Shown: positions 25,161 to 45,759 of the stretch, piece by piece
Numbering within the stretch: position 1 is the first letter of the stretch
Layout: the number at the start of each line of letters is the position of its first letter
Virus record (IMG/VR): IMGVR_UViG_3300028654_000001
Span: 434,001 to 498,000 of that record
Reading direction: 5' to 3' (one strand)
DNA: 64,000 bases
Translations under genes and position numbers: made by a program
The notes under the pieces: model-generated
Database searches by the model: none
What the model was told of the DNA's origin: nothing
Seen by the model: the letters and a program-made list of their open reading frames with translations, nothing else

Positions 25161-25233
25161 TGAGAGACATGGGACTCGAACCCATCATCAACGCCGTGTC
25201 ACAGCGTGCTCAACACCCGTAGAGAGGTCTCCC
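25161..25233 (-). tRNA. tRNA-Val(GAC), atypical D arm
   Basis: acgct-GT GAC AC-ggcgt; T loop TTCGAGT. Confidence 0.6.
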
Positions 25234-25243
25234 ATAATGAGCA

Positions 25244-25320
25244 TGGTAGGTTCACTCGGGTTCGAACCGAGAACAACCCGGTTATGAGCCGGGGGCTCTG
25301 ACCAATTGAGCTATGAACCT
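25244..25320 (-). tRNA. tRNA(CAT), Ile2-like or Met
   Basis: Cloverleaf, CT CAT AA, CCA encoded. Confidence 0.88.
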
Positions 25321-25321
25321 G

Positions 25322-25432
25322 CTAGTCCGAGTGCCCGGGATTGAACCGGGAGCAGAGATTTATAAGAACTCCTGTGGCTACCAGCCCCACACCCGGAGAG
25401 GTGTTTGATGGTAGCCATCGTATCTTGAACAT
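25322..25432 (-). CDS. Mini-ORF MFKIRWLPSNTS... read across tRNA-Ile(TAT)
   Basis: SD AAGGAG; ATA at codon 4. Confidence 0.4.
   Translation of the reverse strand: MFKIRWLPSNTSPGVGLVATGVLINLCSRFNPGHSD
25326..25396 (-). tRNA. tRNA-Ile(TAT)
   Basis: CT TAT AA loop; acceptor CCGGGTG/CACTCGG. Confidence 0.72.
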
Positions 25433-25453
25433 AACACTAACTCCTTGTTGAGT

Positions 25454-25541
25454 TGGTGCACCAGAAAGGAATCGAACCTTCACGAGTGTAACCTCTCCAG
25501 ATCCTAAATCTGGCGCGTCTGCCTAGTTCCGCCACTGGTGC
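25454..25541 (-). tRNA. tRNA-Leu(TAG)
   Basis: Class II cloverleaf, CCA. Confidence 0.92.
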
Positions 25542-25543
25542 AT

Positions 25544-25620
25544 TGGTAGCCCCGATACGACTTGAACGTACAAAACCTCCCGCTTGTAGGGCGGGCGCTC
25601 TACCCTTGAGCTACGGGGCC
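25544..25620 (-). tRNA. tRNA-Val(TAC)
   Basis: CC TAC AA loop, CCA. Confidence 0.88.
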
Positions 25621-26399
25621 GTAAGTGATTGAGCTTGATTTGGTAAATGGTGTCTACCCCCTGACCAGTACCCGCGAGGTGGGGTCTTTATATTAAACCG
25701 CGTACACATGCGCTTCACAGCAACACCTGAAACACCAATAAGTTTTGAAACTTTAGCTACTGGATTTGACCAGACCAAGTTCCGGAGAACTTCAGGACTC
25801 GGCCAACTTCCCTTTCTTGGACGTCTAGGTGATCCATTAGAGTTCCTACAAGAAGACGAGCAGTACTCAGTAGTAACTTGACCGTTCTGCCTCTGCTTGG
25901 CCTGAAACTCAGAATGGCATACAACACAACCTATCGTAATATACTTAGAATTACTAGAAGTTGGCATCTGAGAGTGGCAGTTAGGGCATAGGAACCTGAG
26001 GTTAGAAGGAACATTATTAGCCCAAATCCCATCAATATGATCAACCTCCAGAGTCAACTTCTTCCCTTTCCAAACAGGAGAGCAGTTACACTCACTACAA
26101 ATGTAGGGAACCCCAGATTCAATCAGAGCGTTCCGTAACCTACGCCCACTCTGGCGATACTTGGCGTTGTAGACCAAGATGGCTTTCCAGTCTTTCCGGG
26201 CATGGAGTCCTCTTTCACAATAACGATTACCAACGAAATGTGAATGGTCTATCTCAAACAAATCAAGTCTACCACGTAAGTAGGTGCTCATCCCCCCTGA
26301 GTAAGATCCAATACCCAGATAACGAAGAACATCTGCCATATTATGAGACCTCAGAGCCGCTTCAGTTAGTAACTCTTTGGTGTACTGGGATCGTTTCAT
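25611..26399 (-). CDS. HNH homing endonuclease; stop lies inside tRNA-Val
   Basis: LEVDHIDG...NNVPSNLRFLCPNCH; C-terminal HTH. Confidence 0.88.
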   Translation of the reverse strand: MKRSQYTKELLTEAALRSHNMADVLRYLGIGSYSGGMSTYLRGRLDLFEIDHSHFVGNRYCERGLHARKDWKAILVYNAKYRQSGRRLRNALIESGVPYICSECNCSPVWKGKKLTLEVDHIDGIWANNVPSNLRFLCPNCHSQMPTSSNSKYITIGCVVCHSEFQAKQRQNGQVTTEYCSSSCRNSNGSPRRPRKGSWPSPEVLRNLVWSNPVAKVSKLIGVSGVAVKRMCTRFNIKTPPRGYWSGGRHHLPNQAQSLTAP

Positions 26400-26463
26400 A
26401 GTAGAGATCCTAGCACAAGAGAAGATATGTTTCTACTCTCAGAAGTTAGCAGTATTAGTGTAG

Positions 26464-26537
26464 TGCTGAAAGAGGGACTCGAACCCTCAACCTACGGCTT
26501 ATGAAACCGTCGCTCTAGCCTGTTGAGCTACATCAGC
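26464..26537 (-). tRNA. tRNA(CAT), elongator Met or Ile2
   Basis: TT CAT AA loop. Confidence 0.88.
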
Positions 26538-26548
26538 ATGAAGAGAGG

Positions 26549-26737
26549 TTACGCCAAACCTCTACTCTTTAGCTTGAATATCACCTGCATGACAGCAGGG
26601 TCATCCTTGCTTGGTAACTTGATCTTGTGCAGGATCTTGTACTTACCACTAGAATCAGTGGTATCTTGACGTTCGTCACTAGGACTCGACTGGCCTCGCA
26701 GCCAAGAGTCATTCTTTGGGTCAAACTTAATGTTCAT
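26549..26737 (-). CDS. Hypothetical protein
   Basis: Coupled to upstream gene by ATGA overlap. Confidence 0.5.
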   Translation of the reverse strand: MNIKFDPKNDSWLRGQSSPSDERQDTTDSSGKYKILHKIKLPSKDDPAVMQVIFKLKSRGLA

Positions 26738-27924
26738 ATAACCCGCCCCTCATGAGCCCCACCCACAACCAATATTTCAGCCTCAGTCTCGAGCTCTGGG
26801 TGTGTGATATTTGACATCAAGACTTTTTCTACTGGGATCTTAAATTCAAGTGCGGTGCCAAAGGCGGATGCACGAGAAGAATCGTAACTGAAAGACGAGA
26901 TGGACCTTGTGTCCAAACTGGCTTCCTGCCCTTTTTTAGACTTCTCGAGCCCTTGACCTTGAACCCCTCTGAACAGAGTTAGCTCTTTGATCCCCAAGTG
27001 CTTGTAGTAGGCCTGAGAGAAGTCATAGGCATCTTGTAGGTACTTCTTGAGTTCTTTGCTTTTAGCCCCATCCTCACGGAATCCCTTAGCTTCATCCTCA
27101 TCCTCTTTTGGAGTACGAGATCCACTAACCCCCCAGGATTCAACCGCTCCAACCATATTCTGAACAGACTCTGAATCAGCAAAGTCTCCCGCGATCCTCC
27201 ACCCAGCAACAGCACCCCTACCGACTTTTTGAGCCTCAGCATCCTTTTTCGACAGGTATTGCTGGAAGTACTCGCCGAGTTTATCGCCACCAGCCCATAG
27301 AGCTTGTTCCTGAGGGCTGAGACGATCAAAGGCCTTCTTAAACTTGTTAGGATACTGATCCCCAGGAGATCTCTTCTTCATATGGGCACTCTTGAAGGAC
27401 TTGACTGCCTTAGTCATCTCAGCAGTGATCCTATCAAAGTGCTCCTTGTTTTCTGCTATGATCGCATCAAGTTTTTTGGCATCAGGCTTAAATGGATTGG
27501 TTGATACCTCTTCGTCGGAGTCACCCTTTGGTTTTGCCTCTGAAACTGGTTCCTTAGTTTCAGGCTTTTTATCATCCTGATCTTCAGGATCCTTTGACCT
27601 GCCACCAGAGGTGTCCTCTTCCTTCTGCTTGCCAAGCCACTCATAGTACTCTTTTATGGCCTTAGAGTAGAAGCTAGGGTTCTTCAAAGCAGTACTAAAG
27701 GAGACTTCCTTGTTCTTCTTACGAGAATCAGAATCGGAGCTCGGGTTGGGTACTCTTCGCTTACCACCCTCTTGAGTGGAATCTAACCACTCTTTCCACC
27801 TAGGAGGGATCTTACCCTTCTTTGAAGACTCTTCACCTTCCTCCTCACCAGTGCTAAACGCAAGCTTGGTTTGGGCTCGAGCGTATCGAGCGGCAACACG
27901 AAGGATCAGGGCAGCTTCTGACAC
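26734..27924 (-). CDS. Protein with C-terminal ADP-ribosyltransferase-like (R-S-E) domain
   Basis: LFRGV, SISSFS, ETEAEILV; N-terminal RVAARY motif. Confidence 0.7.
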   Translation of the reverse strand: MSEAALILRVAARYARAQTKLAFSTGEEEGEESSKKGKIPPRWKEWLDSTQEGGKRRVPNPSSDSDSRKKNKEVSFSTALKNPSFYSKAIKEYYEWLGKQKEEDTSGGRSKDPEDQDDKKPETKEPVSEAKPKGDSDEEVSTNPFKPDAKKLDAIIAENKEHFDRITAEMTKAVKSFKSAHMKKRSPGDQYPNKFKKAFDRLSPQEQALWAGGDKLGEYFQQYLSKKDAEAQKVGRGAVAGWRIAGDFADSESVQNMVGAVESWGVSGSRTPKEDEDEAKGFREDGAKSKELKKYLQDAYDFSQAYYKHLGIKELTLFRGVQGQGLEKSKKGQEASLDTRSISSFSYDSSRASAFGTALEFKIPVEKVLMSNITHPELETEAEILVVGGAHEGRVI

Positions 27925-27953: not shown

Positions 27954-28030
27954 TGGCACCCCCAGAAGAACTCGAATCTTCAACCTCTGGCTTCGAAGGC
28001 CAACGCTCTATCCAATTGAGCTATAGGGGC
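27954..28030 (-). tRNA. tRNA-Arg(TCG)
   Basis: Cloverleaf, CCA. Confidence 0.9.
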
Positions 28031-28034
28031 ATGA

Positions 28035-28367
28035 CTAACGGGAACGATTACTACAGTGGATGCTACCACCGGCATTGGCATTCCCATGAATATCTTGACA
28101 GTTGACGCTACCACCCGCGCTAGCTGATCCCTGGATGTTCTCAGCATGAACACTCCCTCCAGCACTCACGTTACCCGCGACATCTCCACAAGTGACAGAC
28201 CCGTCAGCACGAAGGTTGACGAGAGGGGCTTCCCAGTTGATGTTGACAACACCTTGAAGACCACCCTCTACCACCACCCCATCGATAGAGACTACCCCGT
28301 CGATTACCGAAAGGTTGGAGCCAGAGGGGCTTTCTATACGCTTACCGTTGATTACAATTACAGGCAT
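28035..28367 (-). CDS. Gly-rich beta-helix-like small protein
   Basis: AGGSV repeats; ATG 28367 preceded by GGTGTA. Confidence 0.7.
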   Translation of the reverse strand: MPVIVINGKRIESPSGSNLSVIDGVVSIDGVVVEGGLQGVVNINWEAPLVNLRADGSVTCGDVAGNVSAGGSVHAENIQGSASAGGSVNCQDIHGNANAGGSIHCSNRSR

Positions 28368-28387
28368 AGCCAGTAATACACCGTAGT

Positions 28388-28464
28388 TGGCGATCCTGGG
28401 GAGACTCGAACTCCCGACGTTTTGATTCGGAATCAAAGACTCTATCCAACTGAGCTACAGGATC
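28388..28464 (-). tRNA. tRNA-Arg(CCG)
   Basis: TT CCG AA, CCA. Confidence 0.9.
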
Positions 28465-28466
28465 AT

Positions 28467-28542
28467 TGGTGTCCACAGGTGGGATCGAACCACCGGCCTC
28501 TCGGTTCGCAGCCGAACGCTCTATCCTCTGAGCTATGCGGAC
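28467..28542 (-). tRNA. tRNA-Arg(GCG)
   Basis: ttcgg-CT GCG AA-ccgag, CCA. Confidence 0.9.
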
Positions 28543-28579
28543 ATGTTAGTAACGGGGTACCGCTACTAACTTGACCTAG

Positions 28580-29089
28580 CTAGTAGCGGTAGAGTTGAGC
28601 CTCTAGGGGAACAGTATCCTTACTGAAGGTTCCCTCTTGACCCTCAGGAATCAGTACAATACTGAGATCTGGAATACTCCTCGAGAGGAACACCTCGGTA
28701 CTCCAAAGGAGACCTTGCAGACCAGACCTCAGGAACTCTATCTTCGTCTCTGGGGTGAAGATATCCCTACAATGCTTACGAACATTGCAGAAAGTACTTG
28801 CAGTCATCCAAACCCGGCTCACTCTCTTATCTAACCGCTCAACTGAAAGGAAAGCGTCAGCAATTAAGTCAGGAGTGAGTAGGGTAGGAGTTGTAAGAGA
28901 TCTCTCGAAACAATGAAGGGCTTCCTTCAAGTGTTCGAGACCCTTATCTTGCATCGGGTTCTTGTTGGTCTTCTTACCAACATTAGTAGCCAGCAAGAGG
29001 AAGTCCCCTCTCATCTGATTGATGATCTCGAGCTGGCTGTCAGTGAATAACTTCTTCGGGCCAAAAACAGACTGAATATCTAAAGGCAT
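28580..29089 (-). CDS. Hypothetical protein
   Basis: SD GGAGG, 169 aa. Confidence 0.7.
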   Translation of the reverse strand: MPLDIQSVFGPKKLFTDSQLEIINQMRGDFLLLATNVGKKTNKNPMQDKGLEHLKEALHCFERSLTTPTLLTPDLIADAFLSVERLDKRVSRVWMTASTFCNVRKHCRDIFTPETKIEFLRSGLQGLLWSTEVFLSRSIPDLSIVLIPEGQEGTFSKDTVPLEAQLYRY

Positions 29090-29116
29090 GATAACCTCCA
29101 GAACTCAAATACACCA

Positions 29117-29192
29117 TGGTACCTCCGGCAGGATTCGAACCTGCAATAAACAGTTTAGAAAACTGCGAGTCTATCCGTTGACCTACGGAGGC
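29117..29192 (-). tRNA. tRNA-Arg(TCT)
   Basis: TT TCT AA, CCA. Confidence 0.9.
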
Positions 29193-29883: not shown

Positions 29884-29887
29884 TTAG

Positions 29888-29959
29888 AGCGGGTAACCAG
29901 ACTCGAACTGGTGACATTCAACTTGGAAGGATGACGTTCTACCACTGAACTATACCCGC
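29888..29959 (-). tRNA. tRNA-Gly(TCC)
   Basis: Cloverleaf. Confidence 0.9.
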
Positions 29960-29964
29960 ATTAG

Positions 29965-30036
29965 AGTCGAGGATGAGATTCGAACTCACATACAACGGTT
30001 TTGCAAACCGCCCCCTGACCATTCGGGCACCTCGAC
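29965..30036 (-). tRNA. tRNA-Cys(GCA)
   Basis: TT GCA AA, U73. Confidence 0.9.
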
Positions 30037-30047
30037 GTAATGTATAG

Positions 30048-30120
30048 AGCGGGCGATCGGGATCGAACCGACCAGATCCTGATTGGCAACCAGGTACCTC
30101 ACCGTTGAGGAGTCACCCGC
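30048..30120 (-). tRNA. tRNA-Gly(GCC)
   Basis: Cloverleaf. Confidence 0.88.
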
Positions 30121-30122
30121 AC

Positions 30123-30157
30123 AAAAAGAAGGAAGCCCGGTTCTCACTAGGCTTCCT
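30123..30157 (-). terminator. Intrinsic terminator inside the array
   Basis: GGAAGCCT/GGGCTTCC stem followed by TTCTTTTT. Confidence 0.55.
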
Positions 30158-30228
30158 ACAGGGGCGAACCGGTTTCCCAGTTTTGCCCTCCACCACGGAT
30201 TACCCACGTTTTACGGGGTTATCTCCGG

Positions 30229-30301
30229 AGCCCACACCCGGACTTGAACCGGGCACCCCGTCCTTACCAAGGACGTGCTCTACCAAATGAGCTATGCGGG
30301 C
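30229..30301 (-). tRNA. tRNA-Thr(GGT)
   Basis: Cloverleaf. Confidence 0.9.
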
Positions 30302-30302
30302 A

Positions 30303-30617
30303 TTATGACTTACGGTTAGGGAACTTTGACTTGGGGTTGACTGAGAACCCCAAAAGAAGGTTGTGGTCATTATCATCGTAGTTCCCGCAAAGGTACCCAA
30401 CCTCGGTACCCGGGATGGTCCCTATGACCCCATTGAGGAGGCCTAGGATGCTAAGAGTGGTTCGGTTAGCCACCCGAACTTGAACCGTAGGGTGATCTGC
30501 TAGGACCTCATTCGCCGGAACTCGATGGGCGAACAAGGCCTTGATGGCCTCAGGATCAATCTGAAAGTATTCATTGAGGCACTTCACAATGTGCTCTGCT
30601 AGCTCTATCTGATCCAT
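30303..30617 (-). CDS. Hypothetical phage protein (LADHPTVQV, LGLLNG)
   Basis: ATG 30617 after GGTGTA. Confidence 0.7.
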   Translation of the reverse strand: MDQIELAEHIVKCLNEYFQIDPEAIKALFAHRVPANEVLADHPTVQVRVANRTTLSILGLLNGVIGTIPGTEVGYLCGNYDDNDHNLLLGFSVNPKSKFPNRKS

Positions 30618-30635
30618 GATAACCAGATACACCAG

Positions 30636-30708
30636 AGCGGGAAAAGGGACTCGAACCCTCGACATTTTGGTTGGGAACCAAGTACTCTACCAACTGAGTT
30701 ACTCCCGC
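30636..30708 (-). tRNA. tRNA-Gly(CCC)
   Basis: Cloverleaf. Confidence 0.9.
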
Positions 30709-31264: not shown

Positions 31265-31292
31265 ACCTGATTGATTGAGATAAGAGGATTAG

Positions 31293-31366
31293 AGCTGACG
31301 AGGAGAATCGAACTCCTAACCCCTGGTTTACAAAACCAGAGCTCTACCGGATTGAGCTACATCAGC
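31293..31366 (-). tRNA. tRNA-Thr(TGT)
   Basis: Cloverleaf. Confidence 0.9.
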
Positions 31367-31501
31367 ATTGGGTTACTATTGCCAGTGGATTATCCCCGTT
31401 CTGGCCCGGAGTAACCACCGGTATTGGCAGCGATTGTACATTACTCTCTAGGTTCACGCGTAGTACCCAGATCATCTGGCCTAAGGCATTGCCAGATCCA
31501 G

Positions 31502-31574
31502 TGGATCGGAGGAGAGTTGAACTCCTGCTCTCTCCCGTGCGAGGGGAGCGTTTTCCCAATTAAACTACCGACCC
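31502..31574 (-). tRNA. tRNA-Ala(CGC)
   Basis: CT CGC AC; G3:U70. Confidence 0.88.
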
Positions 31575-31586
31575 CATGAAGTTTAG

Positions 31587-31686
31587 TGCCGAGTGCATTG
31601 CCGAGTCGAACGGCTTCTCAATCCAGAGCGAGGGAGGAAATGAACCTCCACAGGGCGTCCCCTGCACGACCAATCATACACTCGAC
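31587..31686 (-). ncRNA. Unclassified tRNA-like RNA
   Basis: Long terminal stem GTCGAGTGTAT/ATGCACTCGGC, T arm gccg-TTCGACT-cggc, two internal hairpins. Confidence 0.5.
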
Positions 31687-31687
31687 A

Positions 31688-31764
31688 TGGTGGAAGTGAA
31701 GGGACTCGAACCCTCAACCTTTGGCTTGCAAAGCCACTGCTCTCCCAAATTGAGCTACACCCCC
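31688..31764 (-). tRNA. tRNA-Ala(TGC)
   Basis: Cloverleaf, G3:U70, CCA. Confidence 0.92.
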
Positions 31765-31767
31765 ATA

Positions 31768-31977
31768 TTACTGGTCAACAATCTCTACTTCACTCTCTTT
31801 CCACCAGTAGAGTGGAAAGTCCAACATCACATACCCTATGTAAGGTGGGTGATTTGGCATACTTGTAACAACTCGTGTACTGGGTAATGGCTTTTCGATA
31901 TCAAGCCCATTACGTAACAGGTAGTTATTCCAGGCCTCGGGTTTAATCTTTACGAGTGTACCTACTGAAAGATCCAT
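31768..31977 (-). CDS. Hypothetical protein
   Basis: GGTGTA upstream. Confidence 0.6.
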   Translation of the reverse strand: MDLSVGTLVKIKPEAWNNYLLRNGLDIEKPLPSTRVVTSMPNHPPYIGYVMLDFPLYWWKESEVEIVDQ

Positions 31978-32175
31978 ACGGATCTATACACCATATCAGT
32001 GATAATTATCAGGACGCTGACAACTACTATCATGATGAAGATACTCACCTTGATAGCACCAAGAATCACAGTAACCACAGACTTGAACGGTGGGTTCCTT
32101 TTTGGGTTCCGACTTATGTTCCTTCAAAATCTCTGCTTCCATGGTAACCTCAACTGAGTCACAAAAAAAGAAGAT

Positions 32176-32419
32176 TGGTGGACAGGATCGGAATCGAACC
32201 GACAATCAACACATTGACCTCTTAGGACAACACGCTTCCCTAGCGACCTGGGGTCTCCATGCCATTCGGTGCTTCTGAAACCTTGGTCAAACCTTCCAGA
32301 GTTGTCAAGGCCCGAGCCGCGCCCTGCCTCGCTCCCCTCTTTCCAGCTATGCGTTGGGGAGTCAACCCAATCACAACCTTGTTTTTAGTGGTGCCTTCCC
32401 AATTTAGGCTATCCAGCCC
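32176..32419 (-). ncRNA. tRNA-Ala-like RNA with ~170-nt structured insert replacing the anticodon arm
   Basis: GGGCTGG/CCTGTCC-ACCA with G3:U70, D arm and T arm intact. Confidence 0.6.
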
Positions 32420-32901
32420 ATAGTGGAACATGCCGGACTCGAACCGGCCACCTCTTGCCTGCCAGGCAAGCGCTCTCCCAGATGAGCTAATGCCCCATTC
32501 TTTCTACCGTGACCTACGTTAAGAGACCCAAATGTTGGGGTAAGCGAGTGACAGTTTGGACATAAGAAGGTCAGGTTGGTTTCGATTGAGTTGTGAGGAT
32601 TTCCGTCTAGGTGCTCAACATTCACAGGGACCTTACCTGTTACCGGGTTCTTCTCAGCCCAATCACACCTAGTACAGTTTTCTCCGTACTTACTTATGAG
32701 GTACCTGCGAACATGACTTGAGACCCTAAGGTCTCGGCCATGACTGATGTTACCTGTTTCAAGACCCGACTTCCATCGATCAATGTACTCAAGGTACTGT
32801 TGCTCAAGCTGGCAGTAGTTCGAACAGTACTTGCTCCTGAGGTTGGTGACAGATTTGCCGCATATTGGGCATGGTTTTCTATCCCTACGGGGTCTAGCCA
32901 T
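32404..32901 (-). CDS. HNH endonuclease reading through tRNA-Ala(GGC)
   Basis: CPICG, YCSNYC, VEHLDGN...NLTFLCPNCHSLT. Confidence 0.85.
   Translation of the reverse strand: MARPRRDRKPCPICGKSVTNLRSKYCSNYCQLEQQYLEYIDRWKSGLETGNISHGRDLRVSSHVRRYLISKYGENCTRCDWAEKNPVTGKVPVNVEHLDGNPHNSIETNLTFLCPNCHSLTPTFGSLNVGHGRKNGALAHLGERLPGRQEVAGSSPACSTMGWIA
32424..32496 (-). tRNA. tRNA-Ala(GGC)
   Basis: Cloverleaf, G3:U70. Confidence 0.9.
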
Positions 32902-37433: not shown

Positions 37434-37471
37434 ACCAAGAAGTACCCTATAAGTGAAACTTGATCAAGTAG

Positions 37472-38061: not shown

Positions 38062-38077
38062 ACTAAAGTTACACCAG

Positions 38078-38162
38078 CGGAAGGCAGACGATTCGAACGC
38101 CATAGTGTTACCTACGCACCGCTCAGCAGGCGGGCTCCAGACCAGATCCAGATTTACCTTCC
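38078..38162 (-). tRNA. tRNA-Ser(GCT)
   Basis: Class II, CT GCT GA. Confidence 0.82.
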
Positions 38163-38335
38163 ATAAAGTTTGGCAGGATCTCATTATTGGGTGCGCACCC
38201 TCAGAAATCTTGCTGGATCGGACCCTCAAGACCGACTGCCATTCAGCTTCCGCTTCCCTCATCTTACAAGAGTTCAGCAGCTTCAGCCCAAGTCAGGTAA
38301 CAGAGGTAAGATGATCCCTGATGATTCGGGCTTAG

Positions 38336-38423
38336 CGGAAAGTGTAGGAATCGAACCCTTACCCCTTACGAGGTACCCACCAGTTTTCGAAGCTGGTTGC
38401 CATCCGGTTAGCTGGCACCTTCC
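38336..38423 (-). tRNA. tRNA-Ser(CGA)
   Basis: Class II, TT CGA AA. Confidence 0.85.
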
Positions 38424-39207: not shown

Positions 39208-39235
39208 ATTGTAGATCTGAATACGAAAAGAATAG

Positions 39236-39307
39236 TCGGGGTGGTCAGACTTGAACTGACGGCCTCATGCTCCCAAAGCACGCGATCTACCACTGATCTA
39301 CACCCCG
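39236..39307 (-). tRNA. tRNA-Pro(TGG)
   Basis: Cloverleaf. Confidence 0.9.
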
Positions 39308-39370
39308 GTAACGATTACTCTTCTAGCACTTGGAGGGCAGGGTACCACATTACCCATCAAGTGGTATTAG

Positions 39371-39454
39371 TGCATCAGAGAGGACTTGAACCTCCACGGG
39401 TATTACCCCACTTGCACCTCAAGCAAGCGTGTTTGCCAGTTACACCACTGATGC
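39371..39454 (-). tRNA. tRNA-Leu(GAG)
   Basis: Class II. Confidence 0.9.
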
Positions 39455-39511
39455 ATATGTTAGTAAGATATGTCTAGGAAACCAAAGGTTTAACCCAAAC
39501 AAAAAAAATTC

Positions 39512-39620
39512 AAGGAAAAAGCCGCTAAGTCACCCCTGACAAGGGGTGCATAAGACTCGTTTTCAACCATAGAATGTAGTCCCACACAGTATTCAGGGGC
39601 TACTTAGCGGCTATTTCCTT
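39512..39620 (-). ncRNA. Minimal Y RNA-like gene with extended stem followed by a U tract
   Basis: CCCCUGAAUAC...GGACUACAUUC...CUUGUCAGGGG inside a ~19-bp outer stem. Confidence 0.68.
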
Positions 39621-39624
39621 AAAA

Positions 39625-39860
39625 GTTTGACCTCGACAAGTGGTGACAGAGAGGGTTTTTGTGGCCTACACATTGATGGCCCATCTTTCGATGGGTGACA
39701 TCCGTTCGTCCCGAGCCTTCGGCTCCCGACTAGTCTAAGTAGACGAGAGTCTCTGAGCCCTTGTTAAAGGGGCTACTGGCTCCATCGCTAGTCCCTCACG
39801 GGGCATCGCTACCTTAGGACCGTTATCGATTGTACTCCTTGTCGGTATTCGAGGTCGAAC
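39625..39860 (-). ncRNA. Large (236 nt) Y RNA-like gene with multi-hairpin domain
   Basis: GACCUCGAAUAC...GGAGUACAAUC...CUUGUCGAGGUC; own GGTGTATA promoter. Confidence 0.72.
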
Positions 39861-39940
39861 GAGATATACACCGATCTGATACCCAAGTGCAATAGGGAAA
39901 GTTGTCGGGGTGAAAGGATCTTCAACCTAGGTCAGCTAAT

Positions 39941-40017
39941 TGGTCAGGGCAGCCAGAGTTGAACTGGCGATCTTGTGTTCCCGAAACACACGCTTTACCA
40001 GGCTAAGCTATACCCTG
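39941..40017 (-). tRNA. tRNA-Pro(CGG)
   Basis: TT CGG GA, CCA. Confidence 0.88.
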
Positions 40018-40527
40018 AAGAGATAATTTCCCCTCGTGCACCCCAGCGTGACAGTTTCTACATAAGAGCACACAATTTTGAAGTTCTTGCTCTATCCGTT
40101 GCCAAGACCAACCCCTCCAACCTGAAAAGTTTGGGTCTTTCTTGCTAGGATCAAGGTGGTGCATATCTAGAGCTGACTTAAAAACATCAAACCCACAAAT
40201 ACGACAGTTACCACCGAGGTAAGCTATAACCTTACCCTTCTTTTCTTGACCCTTAGTTATGCAGTAATTATTGTGACACCTACCGCACACTTTTAGCTTA
40301 TGCCCATAAAACTTGGTGAGGTCGTCTTCACCACAGTATATACACTTGCGGGGTTTCCCATTAGGGTTTGGATCATTCGGAAGTTTTCCATATGGGCCTC
40401 GTTTGGTATGAAGCTCATACTTATTAAGCCAATATCTAACATTTGTGAAAGAGGTGTTTAGATCTATGGCAATCTGCCTTACACTCTTCCATTGCTGAAG
40501 ATGTAGGATAAGAACTTCTTTTTCCAT
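40003..40527 (-). CDS. HNH endonuclease ending inside tRNA-Pro(CGG)
   Basis: N-terminal HTH, GGNCRICG, ALDMHHLDP, CVLLCRNCH. Confidence 0.85.
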   Translation of the reverse strand: MEKEVLILHLQQWKSVRQIAIDLNTSFTNVRYWLNKYELHTKRGPYGKLPNDPNPNGKPRKCIYCGEDDLTKFYGHKLKVCGRCHNNYCITKGQEKKGKVIAYLGGNCRICGFDVFKSALDMHHLDPSKKDPNFSGWRGWSWQRIEQELQNCVLLCRNCHAGVHEGKLSLQGIA

Positions 40528-41111: not shown

Positions 41112-41128
41112 GCTGAATAATACACCAG

Positions 41129-41202
41129 TCAGGGTAAATGGACTCGAACCATCGACCTCTTGCTCCCCGAGCAAGCGCTCTACCAAACTGAGCTACACCC
41201 TG
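41129..41202 (-). tRNA. tRNA-Pro(GGG)
   Basis: TC GGG GA. Confidence 0.88.
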
Positions 41203-41205
41203 ATA

Positions 41206-41349
41206 GTCACGAAGACAAGAATTCGAAAGAGAAACGTACGGCGTCTTGACCGCTAGACGACCCCCGCATAGGCTTGAGCGGAGGGAGGGATTCGAACCCC
41301 CGATATCCGGCTTGGATGGCAATGTACTCCTTCAGGCATTCTTCGTGGT
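41206..41349 (-). ncRNA. Y RNA-like gene with permuted tRNA domain
   Basis: CACGAAGAAUGC...GGAGUACAUU...CUUGUCUUCGUG; T arm, closed acceptor, D arm. Confidence 0.78.
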
Positions 41350-41955
41350 GGTTGGAGGCGGAGTTGAACCGCCGACACCTTGATTTTCAGTCAAGTGCTC
41401 TACCGACTGAGCTATCCAACCGTTAGGCAAATCAAAGTCAAGAAGATCTCCTTCATACCTCTCTGCCTCAGCAATAAGCAATGAGTCCTCTCTGGTTGAA
41501 TGCTCTATTCTGTGGCAACAAGAGCAGAGCAACTCACACTTCTCAAGTTCTTTCTTCAGTACACTCCAACTCTTGTTAGCTAAACCACCAAAGTTGAAGT
41601 CCTTATCACGTAGGTGGTGGAACTCAAAGGCTGACTGATGCCCAGACCACCCACACCTAATACATTTCCCACCCAGCATCTTGATCCCAGTAGCTTTAGC
41701 TCGATATCTACGGATCTTGGTGTTGCAAGAGTTGCATCTACGTCTACGACTACTCCCATTAAGTCTACCGCAAATCACACATGAGTCATACGTTGGTGAT
41801 TGAATCAACTCGACCCTAAGACCTGACTTGAATGGGACACAAGTAAGGCAAGCTCTTCTCCTGTTGAGAACCCTAATGGTACCATCAACAATGACCCGAT
41901 TAGGGAAGTTTACCTTGCATACTCGACAGGTAGGCATACCAAAAATATAGCACAA
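41332..41955 (-). CDS. HNH endonuclease reading through tRNA-Phe
   Basis: GGKCIRCG, FEFHH, KCELLCSCCH. Confidence 0.85.
   Translation of the reverse strand: MCYIFGMPTCRVCKVNFPNRVIVDGTIRVLNRRRACLTCVPFKSGLRVELIQSPTYDSCVICGRLNGSSRRRRCNSCNTKIRRYRAKATGIKMLGGKCIRCGWSGHQSAFEFHHLRDKDFNFGGLANKSWSVLKKELEKCELLCSCCHRIEHSTREDSLLIAEAERYEGDLLDFDLPNGWIAQSVEHLTENQGVGGSTPPPTTTKNA
41346..41421 (-). tRNA. tRNA-Phe(GAA)
   Basis: Cloverleaf, CCA. Confidence 0.92.
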
Positions 41956-41956
41956 T

Positions 41957-42042
41957 TGGTATCGGAGGAGGGACTCGAACCCTCAAGGGATTTCTCCCAG
42001 CAGTATTTGAAGCTGCCGCGTTTGCCTTTTCGCCACTCCGGC
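41957..42042 (-). tRNA. tRNA-Leu(CAA)
   Basis: Class II, CCA. Confidence 0.88.
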
Positions 42043-42048
42043 ATGTAG

Positions 42049-42130
42049 TACCCAAGGAGAGACTTGAACTCTCACGTCACAAGGACCACCGGTTCTGAGC
42101 CGGCGCTGTACGCCATTCCAGCACTTGGGC
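42049..42130 (-). tRNA. tRNA-Leu(CAG)
   Basis: Class II. Confidence 0.88.
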
Positions 42131-42132
42131 AT

Positions 42133-42205
42133 GGACCAGAGACAAGAAGTGCAGAGAGGGTGTTTTCTCCAATTGAATTGTACTCCCCACGAGCATTCTC
42201 TGGTT
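42133..42205 (-). ncRNA. Minimal Y RNA-like gene
   Basis: ACCAGAGAAUGC...GGAGUACAAU...CUUGUCUCUGGU. Confidence 0.72.
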
Positions 42206-42280
42206 TGGTCGGCCGAGGTGGACTTGAACCACCGTTACACGCGTATCAGGCGTAGATCCTAACCATTAGAAGACCGGCCG
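42206..42280 (-). tRNA. tRNA-Ile(GAT)
   Basis: tacgc-CT GAT AC-gcgtg, CCA; Gln/Glu-like D arm. Confidence 0.8.
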
Positions 42281-42842: not shown

Positions 42843-42929
42843 TGGTAGCCCCTCCCGGACTCGAACCGGGACGTCACGAAGGACAGGAGGGTTTAAGCCT
42901 CCCCCGTCTGCCAGTTCCAGCAAGGAGCC
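42843..42929 (-). tRNA. tRNA-Leu(TAA)
   Basis: Class II, CCA. Confidence 0.88.
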
Positions 42930-44338: not shown

Positions 44339-44412
44339 TGGTGACCCCACCGGAATTTGAATCCGGACCACGGCCTTGAAAGGGCCGTCACCTACCGTTA
44401 GTGTATGGGGCC
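44339..44412 (-). tRNA. tRNA-Glu(TTC)
   Basis: CT TTC AA, CCA. Confidence 0.85.
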
Positions 44413-44417
44413 GTTAG

Positions 44418-44492
44418 CGTCCCTGAGGGGCGATGATCCCCTTTCAGCAGCTTGAGAGGCTACTATCCTAACCAAACGTAGACGACAGGGAC
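44418..44492 (-). tRNA. tRNA-Glu(CTC)
   Basis: CT CTC AA; atypical T loop. Confidence 0.8.
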
Positions 44493-44498
44493 ATGATA

Positions 44499-44565
44499 GG
44501 TGAGACAAGGGACAAACTAGAGAGGTTCAATTATCGAGATTGTACTCCAGTTCAGCATTCTCACC
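44499..44565 (-). ncRNA. Minimal Y RNA-like gene
   Basis: GGUGAGAAUGC...GGAGUACAAUC...CUUGUCUCACC. Confidence 0.72.
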
Positions 44566-44567
44566 GG

Positions 44568-44651
44568 CGGAAGGAGCGGGATTCGAACTCGCAGAGCTGT
44601 TACGCTCGATTGTTTTCAGGACAATTCCCCTCACCAATAGGGAGCCCTTCC
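44568..44651 (-). tRNA. tRNA-Ser(TGA)
   Basis: Class II, CC TGA AA. Confidence 0.82.
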
Positions 44652-44662
44652 GTAAAGTAGAG

Positions 44663-44739
44663 TGGATGCAGGAATTGGATTTGAACCAATGACCTCCAGC
44701 TTATGAGGCTGGCAAGCTACCGGGCTGCTCTATCCTGCG
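44663..44739 (-). tRNA. tRNA-Met(CAT), initiator-like acceptor (C1:A72)
   Basis: fMet-like D arm; lacks the 3 G-C anticodon-stem pairs. Confidence 0.85.
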
Positions 44740-44740
44740 G

Positions 44741-44812
44741 AGCTGATGAGGGGACTTGAACCCGCAACCGCTGGTTTACGAAACCAGTGCTCTACCATTG
44801 AGCTACATCAGC
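44741..44812 (-). tRNA. tRNA-Thr(CGT)
   Basis: Cloverleaf. Confidence 0.9.
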
Positions 44813-44894
44813 ATGGGGCACTCCCGGCTGTGCCAGGCGCCCAGGGGATCTCTACTTCCCCCACTCGTCTCCCGTAGAGATGAGGAAAACGAGT

Positions 44895-44972
44895 TGGTTG
44901 CGGAGCCTTGGATTTGAACCAAGAACCTTCGGGTTATGAGCCCGACGCGCTACCGGGTTGCGCCAGCCCGCA
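44895..44972 (-). tRNA. tRNA-fMet(CAT)
   Basis: tcGGG-CT CAT AA-CCCga, CCA. Confidence 0.85.
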
Positions 44973-45016
44973 ATGCTGACCCTACCAGAGTGACTTGGAA
45001 GGGTCAAGAGACTTTG

Positions 45017-45089
45017 CTCCAGAGAAGGGACTCGAACCCCTAACACCGCGGTTAACAGCCGCGTGCTCTACCAATTGAGCTACACTGGA
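45017..45089 (-). tRNA. tRNA-Asn(GTT)
   Basis: Cloverleaf, G73. Confidence 0.9.
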
Positions 45090-45355
45090 ATATGGAGGCT
45101 GTTTCAAGCCTCCCCCGACACGAGTTGGTGCTCGCGCCGTCGGCACTGTGCTTGCCCCTACGGGGCTTGCCAATGCCTTACTTCATTACGGTCAGGAATG
45201 AACAACTACCCCACAGGCACGGTCGCTGCAGCCCTCGGTTTACTTGAGGTCGATCACGGCACGTCTGCTACCCTGGCCCACAACAGACCAGTAGAATCAG
45301 AATTCATTCACTGTTTAGATTGTCAAGGATCTAGAAAGCAAGGTGCCTTCTTGAT

Positions 45356-45430
45356 TGGTTCCGACACCTGGACTCGAACCAGGATAACGGGATTCAAAGT
45401 CCCGTGCCCTAACCATTGGACGATATCGGA
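45356..45430 (-). tRNA. tRNA-Gln(TTG)
   Basis: Cloverleaf, CCA. Confidence 0.9.
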
Positions 45431-45442
45431 TCAATTACTTAG

Positions 45443-45513
45443 TGGGACATCACAGATTCGAACTGAAATCTACGGTTTAAGAGACCGCTGCTCTACCATT
45501 GAGCTAATATCCC
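45443..45513 (-). tRNA. tRNA-Lys(CTT)
   Basis: CT CTT AA. Confidence 0.9.
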
Positions 45514-45519
45514 ATTGAG

Positions 45520-45593
45520 TGGTAGAGGCAGAGAGATTCGAACTCACATTAACGGGTTAAAAGCCCGCTGGTCTACCGTTGACCTATACCTCC
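45520..45593 (-). tRNA. tRNA-Lys(TTT)
   Basis: CT TTT AA, CCA. Confidence 0.88.
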
Positions 45594-45659
45594 ATATCGT
45601 TTTGGCCCGTCTTCCACGGGCTTGTTCTTGCGTTTCATTCTGGCCTTCTTCTTTCTCAT
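45573..45659 (-). CDS. Lys-rich mini-ORF MRKKKARMKRKNKPVEDGPKRYGGIGQR* running into tRNA-Lys
   Basis: 7 Lys codons; weak SD. Confidence 0.45.
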   Translation of the reverse strand: MRKKKARMKRKNKPVEDGPKRYGGIGQR

Positions 45660-45676
45660 CTCATCTAGTGTCTTTG

Positions 45677-45759
45677 TGGGGCATGGTGGAGTTGAACCAC
45701 TTAACCTGAGGCGACAGTTTTACAGACTGCTACTACTTCCGCGTAGTTAATCACACCCC
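45677..45759 (-). tRNA. tRNA-Tyr(GTA)
   Basis: CT GTA AA, long variable arm. Confidence 0.8.

What the first reader, a model, noticed from the sequence alone, without database searches (positions are those of the whole stretch)
25161..45759. Near-complete one-tRNA-per-anticodon set that avoids host wobble modifications
Seen: 47 tRNAs with all 16 G34, all 14 sense U34 and 14 of 15 sense C34 anticodons (only Val-CAC not found); only CAT is repeated (4 copies). It includes Arg(GCG) instead of the usual ACG, and Ile(TAT). Known: most bacteria use TadA-made ICG for Arg and TilS lysidine for AUA. Inference: the set is built to replace the whole host pool with little dependence on modification enzymes, rather than to tune codon bias. 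Several anticodon loops are atypical (C33 in Val-TAC, Pro-GGG, His, Ser-TGA), which might confer resistance to anticodon nucleases.
Basis: partly seen in the sequence, partly recalled or inferred. Interest (0 to 1): 0.68.

Follow-up and report, generated by a model that had tools for sequence, protein, structure and literature searches.

The report
Near-complete tRNA set of a megaphage
A 512-kb soil phage carries 47 tRNA genes that cover 44 of the 45 usual sense anticodons, each once except four CAT genes; its relatives have similar sets, so it is an extreme but recognisable example of a huge-phage tRNA array.

Summary
All 47 tRNA genes lie on the minus strand at 25161-45759. Of these, 41 come from ARAGORN defaults (37 also above Rfam's threshold), 3 from relaxed ARAGORN, and 3 from manual parsing confirmed by synteny with a relative. 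They give 44 of the 45 non-A34 sense anticodons; only CAT is repeated (4 copies) and only Val-CAC is missing from the whole genome. C33 in Val-TAC, Pro-GGG, His and Ser-TGA is real.

The window belongs to a complete tailed-phage genome from rhizosphere metagenomes. The phage has its own CCA-adding enzyme and tmRNA. No TilS or TadA was found, and neither of the two tRNA-synthetase core families searched.

Five relatives (255-448 kb) carry colinear or similar arrays covering 39-42 of 45 anticodons. All five keep Arg-ACG (A34) and have duplicated genes. Near-full coverage is therefore a clade trait, while "A34-free, one gene per anticodon" is peculiar to this genome.

Most sub-threshold Ser calls and Tyr are explained by an 8/4 acceptor/T-stem architecture, already described for phage Ser tRNAs.

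Independence from host modification enzymes and nuclease resistance through C33 remain untested. C33 is enriched in Val tRNAs across the clade. No RNA data exist.

Verdict: new member of a known kind, moderately interesting.

The parts
23932..24281 (-). tmRNA gene at the downstream end of the array
   Evidence: Rfam RF00023 at 96.1 bits, full length. By alignment with the tmRNAs of G001 and G003 the tag reads ANDNAYAAVA.
25161..25620 (-). Five tRNA genes: Val-GAC 25161-25233, Met-CAT 25244-25320, Ile-TAT 25325-25396, Leu-TAG 25454-25541, Val-TAC 25544-25620 (C33)
   Evidence: ARAGORN. Rfam scores are 66.9, 54.1 and 56.6 bits for Met, Leu and Val-TAC. Val-GAC was parsed by hand and scores 24.8 bits on the Sec model. 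Ile-TAT has no Rfam hit, but its G001 orthologue is 83% identical with compensatory stem changes.
26463..26537 (-). tRNA Met-CAT, elongator-like; its acceptor stem GCTGATG is shared with the Thr tRNAs
   Evidence: ARAGORN; Rfam 66.3 bits.
27954..29192 (-). Four Arg tRNA genes: TCG 27954-28030, CCG 28388-28464, GCG 28467-28542, TCT 29117-29192
   Evidence: Rfam 61.7-65.5 bits. G001 has ACG and GCG at the same place in the same gene order.
29887..30708 (-). Gly-TCC 29887-29959, Cys-GCA 29964-30036, Gly-GCC 30047-30120, Thr-GGT 30227-30301, Gly-CCC 30635-30708
   Evidence: Gly-GCC is only just above threshold (31.5 bits). U73 is present in all Gly and Cys genes.
31292..32496 (-). Thr-TGT 31292-31366, Ala-CGC 31501-31574, Ala-TGC 31688-31764, Ala-GGC 32423-32496
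   Evidence: Rfam 58.5-68.4 bits. G3:U70 is present in all three Ala genes.
31592..31682 (-). Conserved structured RNA of unknown kind between two Ala genes; not a tRNA
   Evidence: The syntenic copy in G001 has compensatory changes in the outer stem. No Rfam hit.
33714..35224 (-). Gln-CTG 33714-33789, Trp-CCA 34041-34114, Asp-GTC 34151-34229, Arg-CCT 35152-35224
   Evidence: Rfam 43.4-60.2 bits.
35015..35148 (-). YrlA-like (Y RNA-like) element just 3' of Arg-CCT
   Evidence: RF02553 at 41 bits, below the threshold of 69. G001 has a syntenic hit after its Arg-cct.
36464..38423 (-). His-GTG 36464-36541 (with G-1, C73, C33, G8), Ser-GGA 37471-37554, Ser-GCT 38078-38162, Ser-CGA 38335-38423
   Evidence: The three Ser genes have an 8-bp acceptor stem and a T stem of 4 bp or fewer. 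The order Ser-cga, Ser-gct, Ser-gga, His is the same in G001.
39235..40017 (-). Pro-TGG 39235-39307, Leu-GAG 39370-39454, Pro-CGG 39941-40017
   Evidence: Rfam 54.9-67.1 bits. A co-occurring strain variant skips 39368-41041.
40003..40527 (-). HNH endonuclease ORF inside the array; its stated end overlaps Pro-CGG by a few bases
   Evidence: Pfam HNH, E = 1e-5.
41128..42280 (-). Pro-GGG 41128-41202 (C33), Phe-GAA 41346-41421, Leu-CAA 41957-42042, Leu-CAG 42048-42130, Ile-GAT 42206-42280
   Evidence: Rfam 42.6-74.6 bits; anticodon loops.
41206..41346 (-). Second YrlA-like element, between Phe and Pro-GGG
   Evidence: RF02553 at 36.3 bits, below threshold. G001 has a syntenic hit after its Phe gene.
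42843..42929 (-). tRNA Leu-TAA, with a weak D stem
   Evidence: ARAGORN default only, no Rfam hit. Syntenic with G001 Leu-taa.
44339..45759 (-). Glu-TTC 44339-44412, Glu-CTC 44417-44492, Ser-TGA 44566-44651 (C33), Met-CAT 44663-44739 (C1xA72), Thr-CGT 44739-44812, Met-CAT 44895-44972, Asn-GTT 45016-45089, Gln-TTG 45356-45430, Lys-CTT 45442-45513, Lys-TTT 45520-45593, Tyr-GTA 45677-45759
   Evidence: Glu-CTC has the unusual T loop ATCATCG and no Rfam hit. Tyr folds with an 8-bp acceptor and a 4-bp T stem.
25611..26399 (-). ORF with a weak HNH_3 match inside the array
   Evidence: Pfam E = 4.8e-4, below the curated cut-off.
26734..27924 (-). ORF with a DRAT-like ADP-ribosyltransferase domain inside the array
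   Evidence: Pfam PF07357, E = 1.1e-10.
61833..63542 (-). Ro60-like protein (TROVE plus vWA), the likely partner of the YrlA-like RNAs
   Evidence: Pfam vWA_Ro60 E = 5e-16 and TROVE 27.5 bits.

Best explanation
This is the tRNA array of a complete 512-kb tailed phage from rhizosphere soil. It is a working, near-complete decoding set. With G34, U34 and C34 tRNAs in almost every codon box, 60 of the 61 sense codons can be read by a Watson-Crick or G:U pair. GTG, the exception, is left to U:G wobble by Val-UAC.

The genes are presumably transcribed from the minus strand together with small ORFs and homing-endonuclease genes, then trimmed by host RNases. The 26 genes that lack an encoded CCA would be finished by the phage's own CCA-adding enzyme. 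Charging would be by host synthetases, because the tRNAs carry bacterial identity elements and neither synthetase core family searched was found in the phage. The adjacent tmRNA completes a translation-support module.

The most likely benefit is that phage translation does not depend on what the host tRNA pool offers, or on what is left of it during infection. Shown: the genes, their anticodons, their identity elements, their conservation across a clade, and the CCA-adding enzyme. Inferred: expression, charging, and the selective reason.
For: Phage identity: direct terminal repeats and a CheckV estimate of 100% complete; terminase, portal, protease and tail fibres.

Genes.

Bacterial identity elements: G3:U70 in all 3 Ala genes; G-1 with C73 in His; C1:G72 in all 3 Pro; U73 in Gly and Cys; G73 in all 4 Ser; A73 in all 5 Leu; C1xA72 in one Met-CAT.

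Clade conservation: five relatives by terminase carry 35-50 Rfam tRNA hits each and cover 39-42 of 45 anticodons. Gene order is colinear with G001, yet orthologous tRNAs are only 50-83% identical and their stems are kept.

CCA: a CCA-adding enzyme with PolyA_pol, RNA-binding, HD and tRNA_NucTran2_2 domains, while only 21 of the 47 genes encode CCA.

Synthetases: no class IIa or class Ia core found.

Codon usage: even, with no codon avoided.

Literature: huge phages with up to 67 tRNAs (PMC7162821); tRNA arrays as a counter to host attacks on tRNA (PMC7824862; PMC10264068).
Against: There is no RNA evidence: no RNA run holds the sequence. Ten of the 47 genes are non-canonical or low-scoring. 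Leu-TAA, Glu-CTC, Ile-TAT and Val-GAC have weak D arms or an odd T loop and could be impaired. The host is unknown, so neither codon mismatch nor tRNA depletion can be shown. The array is polymorphic between co-occurring strains: a variant skips 1.67 kb that holds Leu-GAG, Pro-CGG and the HNH ORF, so single genes may be dispensable. Only two synthetase core families were searched.
Confidence: 0.7

Rival explanations
1. The set is shaped to be independent of host wobble-modifying enzymes: Arg-GCG removes the need for TadA, Ile-UAU removes the need for TilS, and a full G/U/C complement removes the need for expanded wobble.
For: This genome has no A34 tRNA, and it has GCG and TAT. No TadA-like or TilS-like gene was found in the phage. 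Ile-TAT is present in 5 of the 6 clade genomes.
Against: All five relatives keep Arg-ACG, and G001 has both ACG and GCG. They also lack TadA and TilS, so the clade tolerates dependence on host TadA. Whether this genome's GCG gene arose from an ACG gene cannot be resolved. E. coli IleRS charges a UAU tRNA about 360-fold worse than the lysidine form, and UAU misreads AUG on E. coli ribosomes (PMC3575796). No class Ia synthetase core, which would include IleRS, was found in the phage. From established knowledge, restrictive U34 modifications in split boxes and modifications at position 37 would still matter.
Confidence: 0.15
2. Codon-usage compensation or host-range breadth. A 49% GC phage with even codon use infects hosts, perhaps several, whose tRNA pools are skewed, and the array supplies whatever is scarce in any of them.
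For: Codon use is even: ATA is 16% of Ile, AGA plus AGG are 44% of Arg, and CTA and TTA are both used. The phage was seen in at least 15 rhizosphere samples. This is the classical explanation for phage tRNAs (PMC10264068 introduction).
Against: The set also includes tRNAs for codons that are unlikely to be limiting in a host, and it covers nearly every anticodon rather than a biased subset. The host is unknown, so no mismatch can be measured.
Confidence: 0.3
3. Counter-defence. The phage tRNAs are replacements that resist host tRNA-cleaving defences, and C33 and the 8/4 architecture are escape features.
For: C33 occurs in 14 of 305 clade tRNAs and in 7 of 16 Val tRNAs (Fisher p = 7e-7, not corrected for relatedness), at a position that is almost invariant U in cellular tRNAs (established knowledge). 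Val-TAC and Pro-GGG with C33 still score 56.6 and 61.3 bits. The published hypothesis and experiments are in PMC10264068 and PMC11555353.
Against: No nuclease is known to be blocked by C33, and none was tested. The host tRNAs are unknown, so no phage-versus-host loop comparison is possible. RtcB-type repair is absent. Mutations in phage tRNAs can also make them more sensitive to cleavage (PMC13056530).
Confidence: 0.3
4. A largely selfish or neutral accumulation. The array grows and turns over through homing endonucleases and horizontal transfer, and many members are decaying copies.
For: HNH ORFs lie inside the array. Strains differ by an indel. Relatives carry duplicates and odd extra calls. 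Mobile long tRNA arrays associated with a homing endonuclease are known (PMC8421152), as is T4 SegB.
Against: Coverage of 39-44 of 45 anticodons in six genomes is far above the random expectation. Identity elements and stems are kept although sequences have diverged to 50-83% identity.
Confidence: 0.1

Closest known systems
tRNA arrays of huge phages (Al-Shayeb et al. 2020, PMC7162821)
   Same: A phage genome above 200 kb with dozens of tRNAs, a tmRNA and tRNA-processing genes. The published maximum is 67 tRNAs per genome.
   Different: No tRNA synthetase was found in the two core families searched. The set here is non-redundant and covers 44 of 45 anticodons. That paper's main text does not use the word anticodon (0 occurrences).
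Mycobacteriophage cluster C1 arrays (for example Rizal, 36 tRNAs; van den Berg et al. 2023, PMC10264068)
   Same: A large same-strand tRNA array whose anticodon-loop deviations have been proposed to evade anticodon nucleases.
   Different: No DNA similarity to any GenBank phage beyond a 73-nt match. The host is unknown. The deviation seen here is C33, which that paper's main text does not mention.
(8/4) tRNA-Ser of phage tRNA clusters, allo-tRNA group (Mukai et al. 2017, PMC5389517)
   Same: An 8-bp acceptor stem, a 4-bp T stem, a long D stem with a short loop, a long variable arm, G73 and serine anticodons, found inside phage tRNA clusters.
   Different: His here is the ordinary bacterial type with G-1 and C73, not the 8/4 His with A73 of that paper. 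Ser-TGA is 7/5. Tyr also appears to be 8/4, and the passages of the paper that were read do not mention that.
Phage T4 tRNA cluster
   Same: tRNA genes interspersed with a homing endonuclease (SegB) and small stable RNAs that are not tRNAs.
   Different: T4 has eight tRNAs, seven with U34, and its Ile gene carries CAT, so it depends on host TilS. This phage uses TAT and has a full set.
Mycoplasma mobile tRNA-Ile(UAU) decoding of AUA (Taniguchi et al. 2013, PMC3575796)
   Same: A UAU anticodon for AUA in place of the lysidine route.
   Different: There the IleRS and the ribosome are co-adapted. Here no class Ia synthetase core (the family of IleRS) was found in the phage, and the host enzyme is unknown.
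Bacterial long tRNA arrays (L-arrays; PMC8421152)
   Same: Up to 43 same-strand tRNA genes, mobile, and associated with a homing endonuclease.
   Different: Those sit in bacterial chromosomes and mostly add isodecoder redundancy. This array is in a phage and adds anticodon breadth.

Membership tests
tRNA (Rfam RF00005, canonical cloverleaf) | Score at or above the gathering threshold of 29 bits | tested here: met
   Met by 37 of the 47 genes. Not met by 10. Five of those hit only the Sec model at 24.8-39.1 bits, and five have no hit at all.
tRNA (functional, bacterial type) | Isotype identity elements: G3:U70 for Ala, G-1:C73 for His, C1:G72 for Pro, U73 for Gly and Cys, G73 plus a long arm for Ser, A73 for Leu | tested here: met
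   Present in every gene of those isotypes.
tRNA (functional) | Mature, CCA-ended, aminoacylated RNA is produced | not testable with these tools
   No RNA run holds the sequence.
Huge-phage tRNA array | The array lies on a bona fide phage genome | tested here: met
   Terminal repeats and a 100% completeness estimate; terminase, portal, protease and tail fibre matches.
(8/4) tRNA-Ser (Mukai 2017) | An eighth acceptor pair (8:65) replaces the outermost T-stem pair (49:65) | tested here: met
   Across the clade, 16 of 20 Ser tRNAs have a Watson-Crick 8:65 pair, found as both A-T and G-C, and 17 of 20 are mismatched at 49:65. Most tRNAs of the other isotypes pair 49:65 and not 8:65; Tyr is the exception. 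In this window Ser-GGA, Ser-GCT and Ser-CGA meet the feature and Ser-TGA does not.
(8/4) tRNA-Ser (Mukai 2017) | Long D stem with a short loop, long variable arm, G73 | tested here: met
   The minimum-energy folds of Ser-GGA and Ser-GCT show 6-7 bp D stems with 3-4 nt loops. G73 is present in all four Ser genes.
Bacterial initiator tRNA | C1xA72 mismatch, A11:U24, and three G:C pairs at the base of the anticodon stem | tested here: inconclusive
   Met-CAT 44663-44739 has C1xA72 and, read from its sequence, A11:T24, but its anticodon stem is CCAGC. Met-CAT 44895-44972 has the GGG:CCC stem but not the other two features.
TilS-independent AUA decoding (M. mobile type) | A tRNA-Ile gene with anticodon TAT | tested here: met
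   25325-25396, with orthologues in G001, G003, G004 and G005.
TilS-independent AUA decoding (M. mobile type) | An IleRS adapted to UAU, and no tilS in the translating cell | not testable with these tools
   The host is unknown. No class Ia synthetase core and no TilS were found in the phage.
Anticodon-nuclease-resistant phage tRNAs (van den Berg 2023) | Loop differences from the host's tRNA at known cleavage sites, and resistance in a cleavage assay | not testable with these tools
   The host tRNAs are unknown. Only the deviation itself (C33) is shown.
Ro60 / Y RNA module | A Ro60 (TROVE) protein and a YrlA RNA at family threshold | tested here: inconclusive
   The protein is above the Pfam cut-offs. 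The RNA hits score 27-41 bits against a threshold of 69, but two of them are syntenic in G001.
Stop-codon recoding with a suppressor tRNA | A suppressor tRNA together with in-frame use of that stop codon | tested here: not met
   A tRNA with anticodon CTA exists at genome 498602-498674. However, TAG ends 37 of 177 long ORFs, and reading TAG as sense does not lengthen ORFs.

The most novel reading that the evidence does not exclude
A clade of rhizosphere megaphages maintains a self-sufficient decoding set in which almost every codon is read by a Watson-Crick or G:U pair. Its structurally deviant members (C33 loops, 8/4 Ser and Tyr) would make phage translation insensitive both to host tRNA-cleaving defences and to the host's wobble-modification state. 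In this reading the A34-free genome studied here is the most advanced stage of that trend.
Probability: 0.2. Interest if true: 0.75.

Novelty: new member of a known kind. Interest (0 to 1): 0.5.

Why it matters
Large tRNA arrays in huge phages are known, but why they exist is still debated: codon tuning, replacement of a degraded pool, or escape from tRNA-cleaving defences.

This genome and its five relatives form a natural series in which anticodon coverage stays near the maximum while single genes turn over quickly. Arg-ACG or Arg-GCG, U33 or C33, and 7/5 or 8/4 architecture all vary between close relatives. That gives concrete, paired substrates for cleavage, charging and modification assays.

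A set of 47 tRNAs that reads 60 of the 61 sense codons by a Watson-Crick or G:U pair (GTG needs U:G wobble) may also interest people who build cell-free translation systems from unmodified transcripts.

Tried and rejected
- Megablast of the array against GenBank phages found only a 73-nt match to Vibrio phages, so there is no close cultured relative.
- Searching viral contigs with the DRAT-like ORF found no relatives. The terminase worked instead.
- TAG recoding, suggested by the tRNA with anticodon CTA, has no support. ORF statistics do not improve, and TAG ends 21% of long ORFs.
- The orthology of Arg-GCG could not be resolved. It is 64% identical to both the ACG and the GCG gene of G001, and 69% to an ACG gene of G002.
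- The promoter and terminator consensus scan of the array gave counts no higher than shuffled sequence.
- Expression could not be tested: only DNA contigs are available and no RNA run.
- Laying contigs of four samples on 36400-42300 showed no differences over 37023-39368 in the long X2 contig, which spans three Ser genes and Pro-TGG. It revealed only a diverged strain variant with a 1.67-kb skip.
- Fold-energy z-scores of the ten weak tRNAs were not significant, from -0.2 to -2.2. That is usual for tRNAs and is not used as evidence.
- ARAGORN at -ps85 and below floods the genome with false calls, including a 100-nt 'Val-cac'. These were rejected.
- ARAGORN's 'Thr-cgt' at 35084-35165 and its 4-base-anticodon call at 25160-25255 were rejected as artefacts that overlap a YrlA-like element and Val-GAC respectively.
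- No RtcB was found.

Full report
**1. The observation**

ARAGORN with default settings finds 41 tRNA genes and one tmRNA in the window. All are on the minus strand, between 23935 and 45593. Rfam confirms the tmRNA (96 bits) and 37 tRNAs above the gathering score.

- Relaxing ARAGORN to 90% of its thresholds adds His-GTG, Ser-CGA and Ser-TGA. At that setting the remaining ~490 kb of the genome gives about a dozen calls, most of them spurious (one is the tRNA-CTA gene of section 9), so about half a false call is expected in the 21-kb array.
- A scan for a T arm followed by a matching acceptor stem, plus reading by eye, adds Val-GAC (25161-25233), Ser-GCT (38078-38162) and Tyr-GTA (45677-45759).

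The full list is 47 genes: 16 G34, 14 U34 and 14 C34 anticodons, with CAT four times and no A34. That is 44 of the 45 sense anticodons that do not start with A. Val-CAC is absent from the whole 512,571-bp genome at any credible threshold.

The loops of Val-TAC, Pro-GGG, His and Ser-TGA do have C at position 33. A random draw of 47 anticodons from 45 gives 29 distinct on average and never more than 39 in 200,000 trials.

**2. What carries it**

The window is bases 434001-498000 of a single 512,571-bp IMG/VR virus record. The record has direct terminal repeats, an estimated completeness of 100% and 49% GC. It has no rRNA.

It encodes a large terminase, portal, head protease and tail fibres. The window also holds:
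- a GroEL-like chaperonin, a class II ribonucleotide reductase and a Ro60-like protein;
- a RecD/Dda-like helicase-nuclease;
- a DNA methylase and a vWA protein.

No GenBank phage resembles the array at the DNA level. The sequence occurs in at least 15 rhizosphere metagenomes. No RNA run holds it.

Apart from a tRNA with anticodon CTA about 600 nt beyond the window end, every tRNA of the genome lies in this array.

**3. Are the weak calls real?**

Ten of the 47 genes fall below Rfam's tRNA threshold. Five of them match the selenocysteine-tRNA model better than the tRNA model, and five have no hit at all. Two lines of evidence argue that most are genuine.

*Synteny.* The closest relative found, G001 (407 kb, terminase 78% identical), has an array in almost the same gene order. 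Tyr is at one end. Ser-cga, Ser-gct, Ser-gga and His run in a row. Arg-tct, Arg-(acg, gcg), Arg-ccg, Arg-tcg, Met, Val-tac, Leu-tag, Ile-tat and Val-gac run to the other end. All three hand-parsed genes, and all four genes that only ARAGORN called, have a counterpart there. Orthologues are only 50-83% identical, yet their stems are kept. For example, Ile-TAT has G:T to T:A and C:G to T:A exchanges in the acceptor and T stems.

*Architecture.* In 16 of the 20 Ser tRNAs of the six genomes, base 8 forms a Watson-Crick pair with base 65, as A-T in some and G-C in others. In 17 of 20, the canonical 49:65 pair is mismatched. In the other isotypes (Tyr aside) most tRNAs pair 49:65 and not 8:65. These Ser tRNAs therefore have an 8-bp acceptor stem and a 4-bp T stem. 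They also have a long D stem with a short loop, which is the minimum-energy fold of Ser-GGA and Ser-GCT.

This is the (8/4) tRNA-Ser that Mukai et al. described from phage tRNA clusters (PMC5389517). It explains why these genes score on the Sec model. Tyr of this phage folds the same way. Ser-TGA is an ordinary 7/5 tRNA.

The remaining odd genes could be impaired:
- His has G8.
- Val-GAC has C8 and a poor D arm.
- Ile-TAT has a short D loop and a T:T mismatch in the anticodon stem.
- Leu-TAA has a weak D stem.
- Glu-CTC has the T loop ATCATCG.

**4. Signs of function**

The isotype identity elements of bacterial tRNAs are all present:
- G3:U70 in the three Ala genes;
- G-1 opposite C73 in His;
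- C1:G72 in the three Pro genes;
- U73 in Gly and Cys;
- G73 in the four Ser genes;
- A73 in the five Leu genes;
- a long variable arm with G1:C72 in Tyr;
- a C1xA72 mismatch in one Met-CAT.

Only 21 genes encode the 3' CCA. Twenty of the other 26 have C-T after the discriminator.

The phage encodes a full-length CCA-adding enzyme at genome 197441-198793. I found no TilS, no TadA-type deaminase, no RtcB, and no class IIa or class Ia synthetase core. Charging would therefore be by host enzymes.

Codon use in 177 long ORFs is even. No codon is avoided, and GTG, the only codon without a Watson-Crick tRNA, makes up 19% of Val codons.

**5. The clade**

Five relatives found through the terminase give 35 to 50 Rfam tRNA hits each. 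They are G001 at 407 kb, G002 at 448 kb, G003 at 363 kb, G004 at 393 kb and G005, a 255-kb fragment. ARAGORN on their arrays gives 39-42 of the 45 anticodons. Near-full coverage is thus a property of the clade, not of this genome alone.

- All five have Arg-ACG. G001 has ACG and GCG side by side, and G002 to G005 have no GCG.
- All have duplicated genes (Asp, Gln, Asn, Phe, Tyr and others).
- G002 and G004 have Val-CAC.

None encodes TadA or TilS. Ile-TAT is present in five of the six genomes.

**6. The modification argument**

A set with G34, U34 and C34 in every box can in principle read every codon without inosine and without expanded U wobble. This genome has that property; GTG is the one codon that needs U:G wobble. 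That much is a correct reading of the anticodon list.

The relatives show that the lineage lives with an A34 tRNA that needs the host's TadA, or else reads poorly. I could not tell from sequence whether GCG here arose from ACG by one transition or whether ACG was lost from an ACG-plus-GCG pair.

For Ile-UAU, the only studied bacterial case needs a changed IleRS and a ribosome that rejects AUG. E. coli IleRS prefers the lysidine form about 360-fold (PMC3575796). No class Ia synthetase core, the family that includes IleRS, was found in the phage.

Phage T4 shows the other solution: its annotated tRNA-Ile gene carries CAT. One of the four CAT genes here could be of that kind, and I could not classify them. 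One has C1xA72 and A11:T24, another has the three G:C pairs of initiators, and two look like elongators.

I therefore rate "built to avoid modification enzymes" as possible but weakly supported.

**7. C33**

Across the six genomes, 14 of 305 tRNAs have C33 and 2 have A33. Seven of the 14 are Val tRNAs, out of 16 Val tRNAs in total. They include both TAC and GAC anticodons and have different acceptor stems. The Fisher test gives p = 7e-7, but the genes are related, so this number overstates the evidence.

Val-TAC and Pro-GGG with C33 are otherwise high-scoring tRNAs. From established knowledge, U33 is nearly invariant in cellular elongator tRNAs.

The pattern fits selection on the Val anticodon loop and fits the hypothesis that phage tRNAs carry loop changes that defeat anticodon nucleases (PMC10264068). 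Nothing here shows which nuclease, if any, is involved, and such changes can also increase sensitivity (PMC13056530).

**8. Most likely function**

I take the array to be a working translation-support module: tRNAs, tmRNA and CCA-adding enzyme. It would make phage protein synthesis independent of the host's tRNA supply.

The main reasons are that coverage is kept near the maximum in six genomes while individual genes diverge, duplicate and are lost, and that identity elements are kept. Whether the pressure is a mismatch with host codon use, loss of host tRNAs during infection, or cleavage by defence systems cannot be decided without the host. These explanations are not exclusive.

Homing endonucleases inside the array and a strain variant lacking 1.67 kb with two tRNAs and the HNH gene account for the turnover. 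T4 SegB and bacterial long arrays show the same association.

**9. Other things seen**

- Two YrlA-like elements sit at conserved syntenic places in the array, and a Ro60-like protein is encoded 17 kb away.
- A 91-nt structured RNA between two Ala genes is more conserved than the tRNAs around it and has compensatory changes in its closing stem.
- ARAGORN's tag for the tmRNA is probably wrong. By homology the tag reads ANDNAYAAVA.
- A tRNA with anticodon CTA lies just outside the window, and relatives have TCA calls. The genome shows no sign of stop-codon recoding.

**10. Verdict**

The thing is a new member of a known kind, the tRNA array of a huge phage. It stands out for a coverage of 44 of 45 anticodons with only CAT repeated, for lacking any A34 tRNA, and for a notable share of non-canonical tRNAs.

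Noticed in passing
window 37471-37554, 38078-38162, 38335-38423, 45677-45759; relatives L027, L029, L030, L032, L034: Ser tRNAs of this phage clade have an 8-bp acceptor stem and a 4-bp T stem, with A-T to G-C covariation at the eighth pair and a long D stem. The Tyr tRNA of this phage folds the same way. 8/4 Ser is published for phage clusters; I did not find 8/4 Tyr in the passages I read.
   Followed up: partly
window 31592-31682 (-); L027 10246-10345: A conserved 91-nt structured RNA between Ala-TGC and Ala-CGC. It has a closing stem with compensatory changes, one GACG-loop hairpin and two T-arm-like hairpins. It has no Rfam family and no anticodon arm.
   Followed up: partly
window 35015-35148, 41206-41346, 29780-29882 (-); protein at 61833-63542 (-): Sub-threshold YrlA (Y RNA-like) matches lie inside the tRNA array. 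Two of them are at syntenic places in G001. A Ro60-like TROVE plus vWA protein is encoded nearby. Together they look like a phage Ro60/Y RNA module.
   Followed up: partly
genome 498602-498674 (-), about 600 nt past the window end (locus L006): A tRNA with anticodon CTA (amber suppressor type) lies apart from the array. Relatives G003 and G004 have TCA-anticodon calls. ORF statistics and stop-codon use give no sign of recoding in this genome.
   Followed up: partly
3' ends of the tRNA genes, 25161-45759: Only 21 of the 47 genes encode CCA. Twenty of the other 26 have C-T after the discriminator (16 CTA, 4 CTG). The phage has its own CCA-adding enzyme at genome 197441-198793.
   Followed up: partly
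window 39368-41041: A co-occurring strain, abundant in one sample, lacks this 1.67-kb stretch (Leu-GAG, Pro-CGG and the HNH ORF). Its neighbouring Pro tRNA region is diverged, with 35 differences in 225 nt.
   Followed up: no
window 26734-27924 (-): An ORF with a DRAT-like ADP-ribosyltransferase domain sits in the middle of the tRNA array. No relatives were found in viral contigs with the pattern search.
   Followed up: partly
window 23932-24281 (-): ARAGORN reports the tmRNA tag as VADLPRDSLGSG. Alignment with the tmRNAs of G001 and G003 puts the tag at ANDNAYAAVA, a proteobacterial-looking tag.
   Followed up: yes
clade-wide: L027, L029, L034 and window 25544-25620: C33 is concentrated in Val tRNAs (7 of 16, both TAC and GAC) in four of the six related genomes. 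It is rare in the other isotypes.
   Followed up: partly
window 26463-26537: This Met-CAT gene shares its first 15 bases, including the acceptor strand GCTGATG, with Thr-TGT and Thr-CGT. It may have arisen from a Thr gene by an anticodon change.
   Followed up: no
genome 126405-126551 (-), locus L008: Two adjacent elements of about 70 nt, each with a perfect 7-bp closing stem and a TTCAATG loop. They are not called as tRNAs.
   Followed up: no
window 37501-38262 (-): A 253-aa ORF with no family match overlaps both Ser-GCT and Ser-GGA. In G001 these two tRNAs are adjacent, so the ORF is either much shorter than listed or spurious.
   Followed up: no
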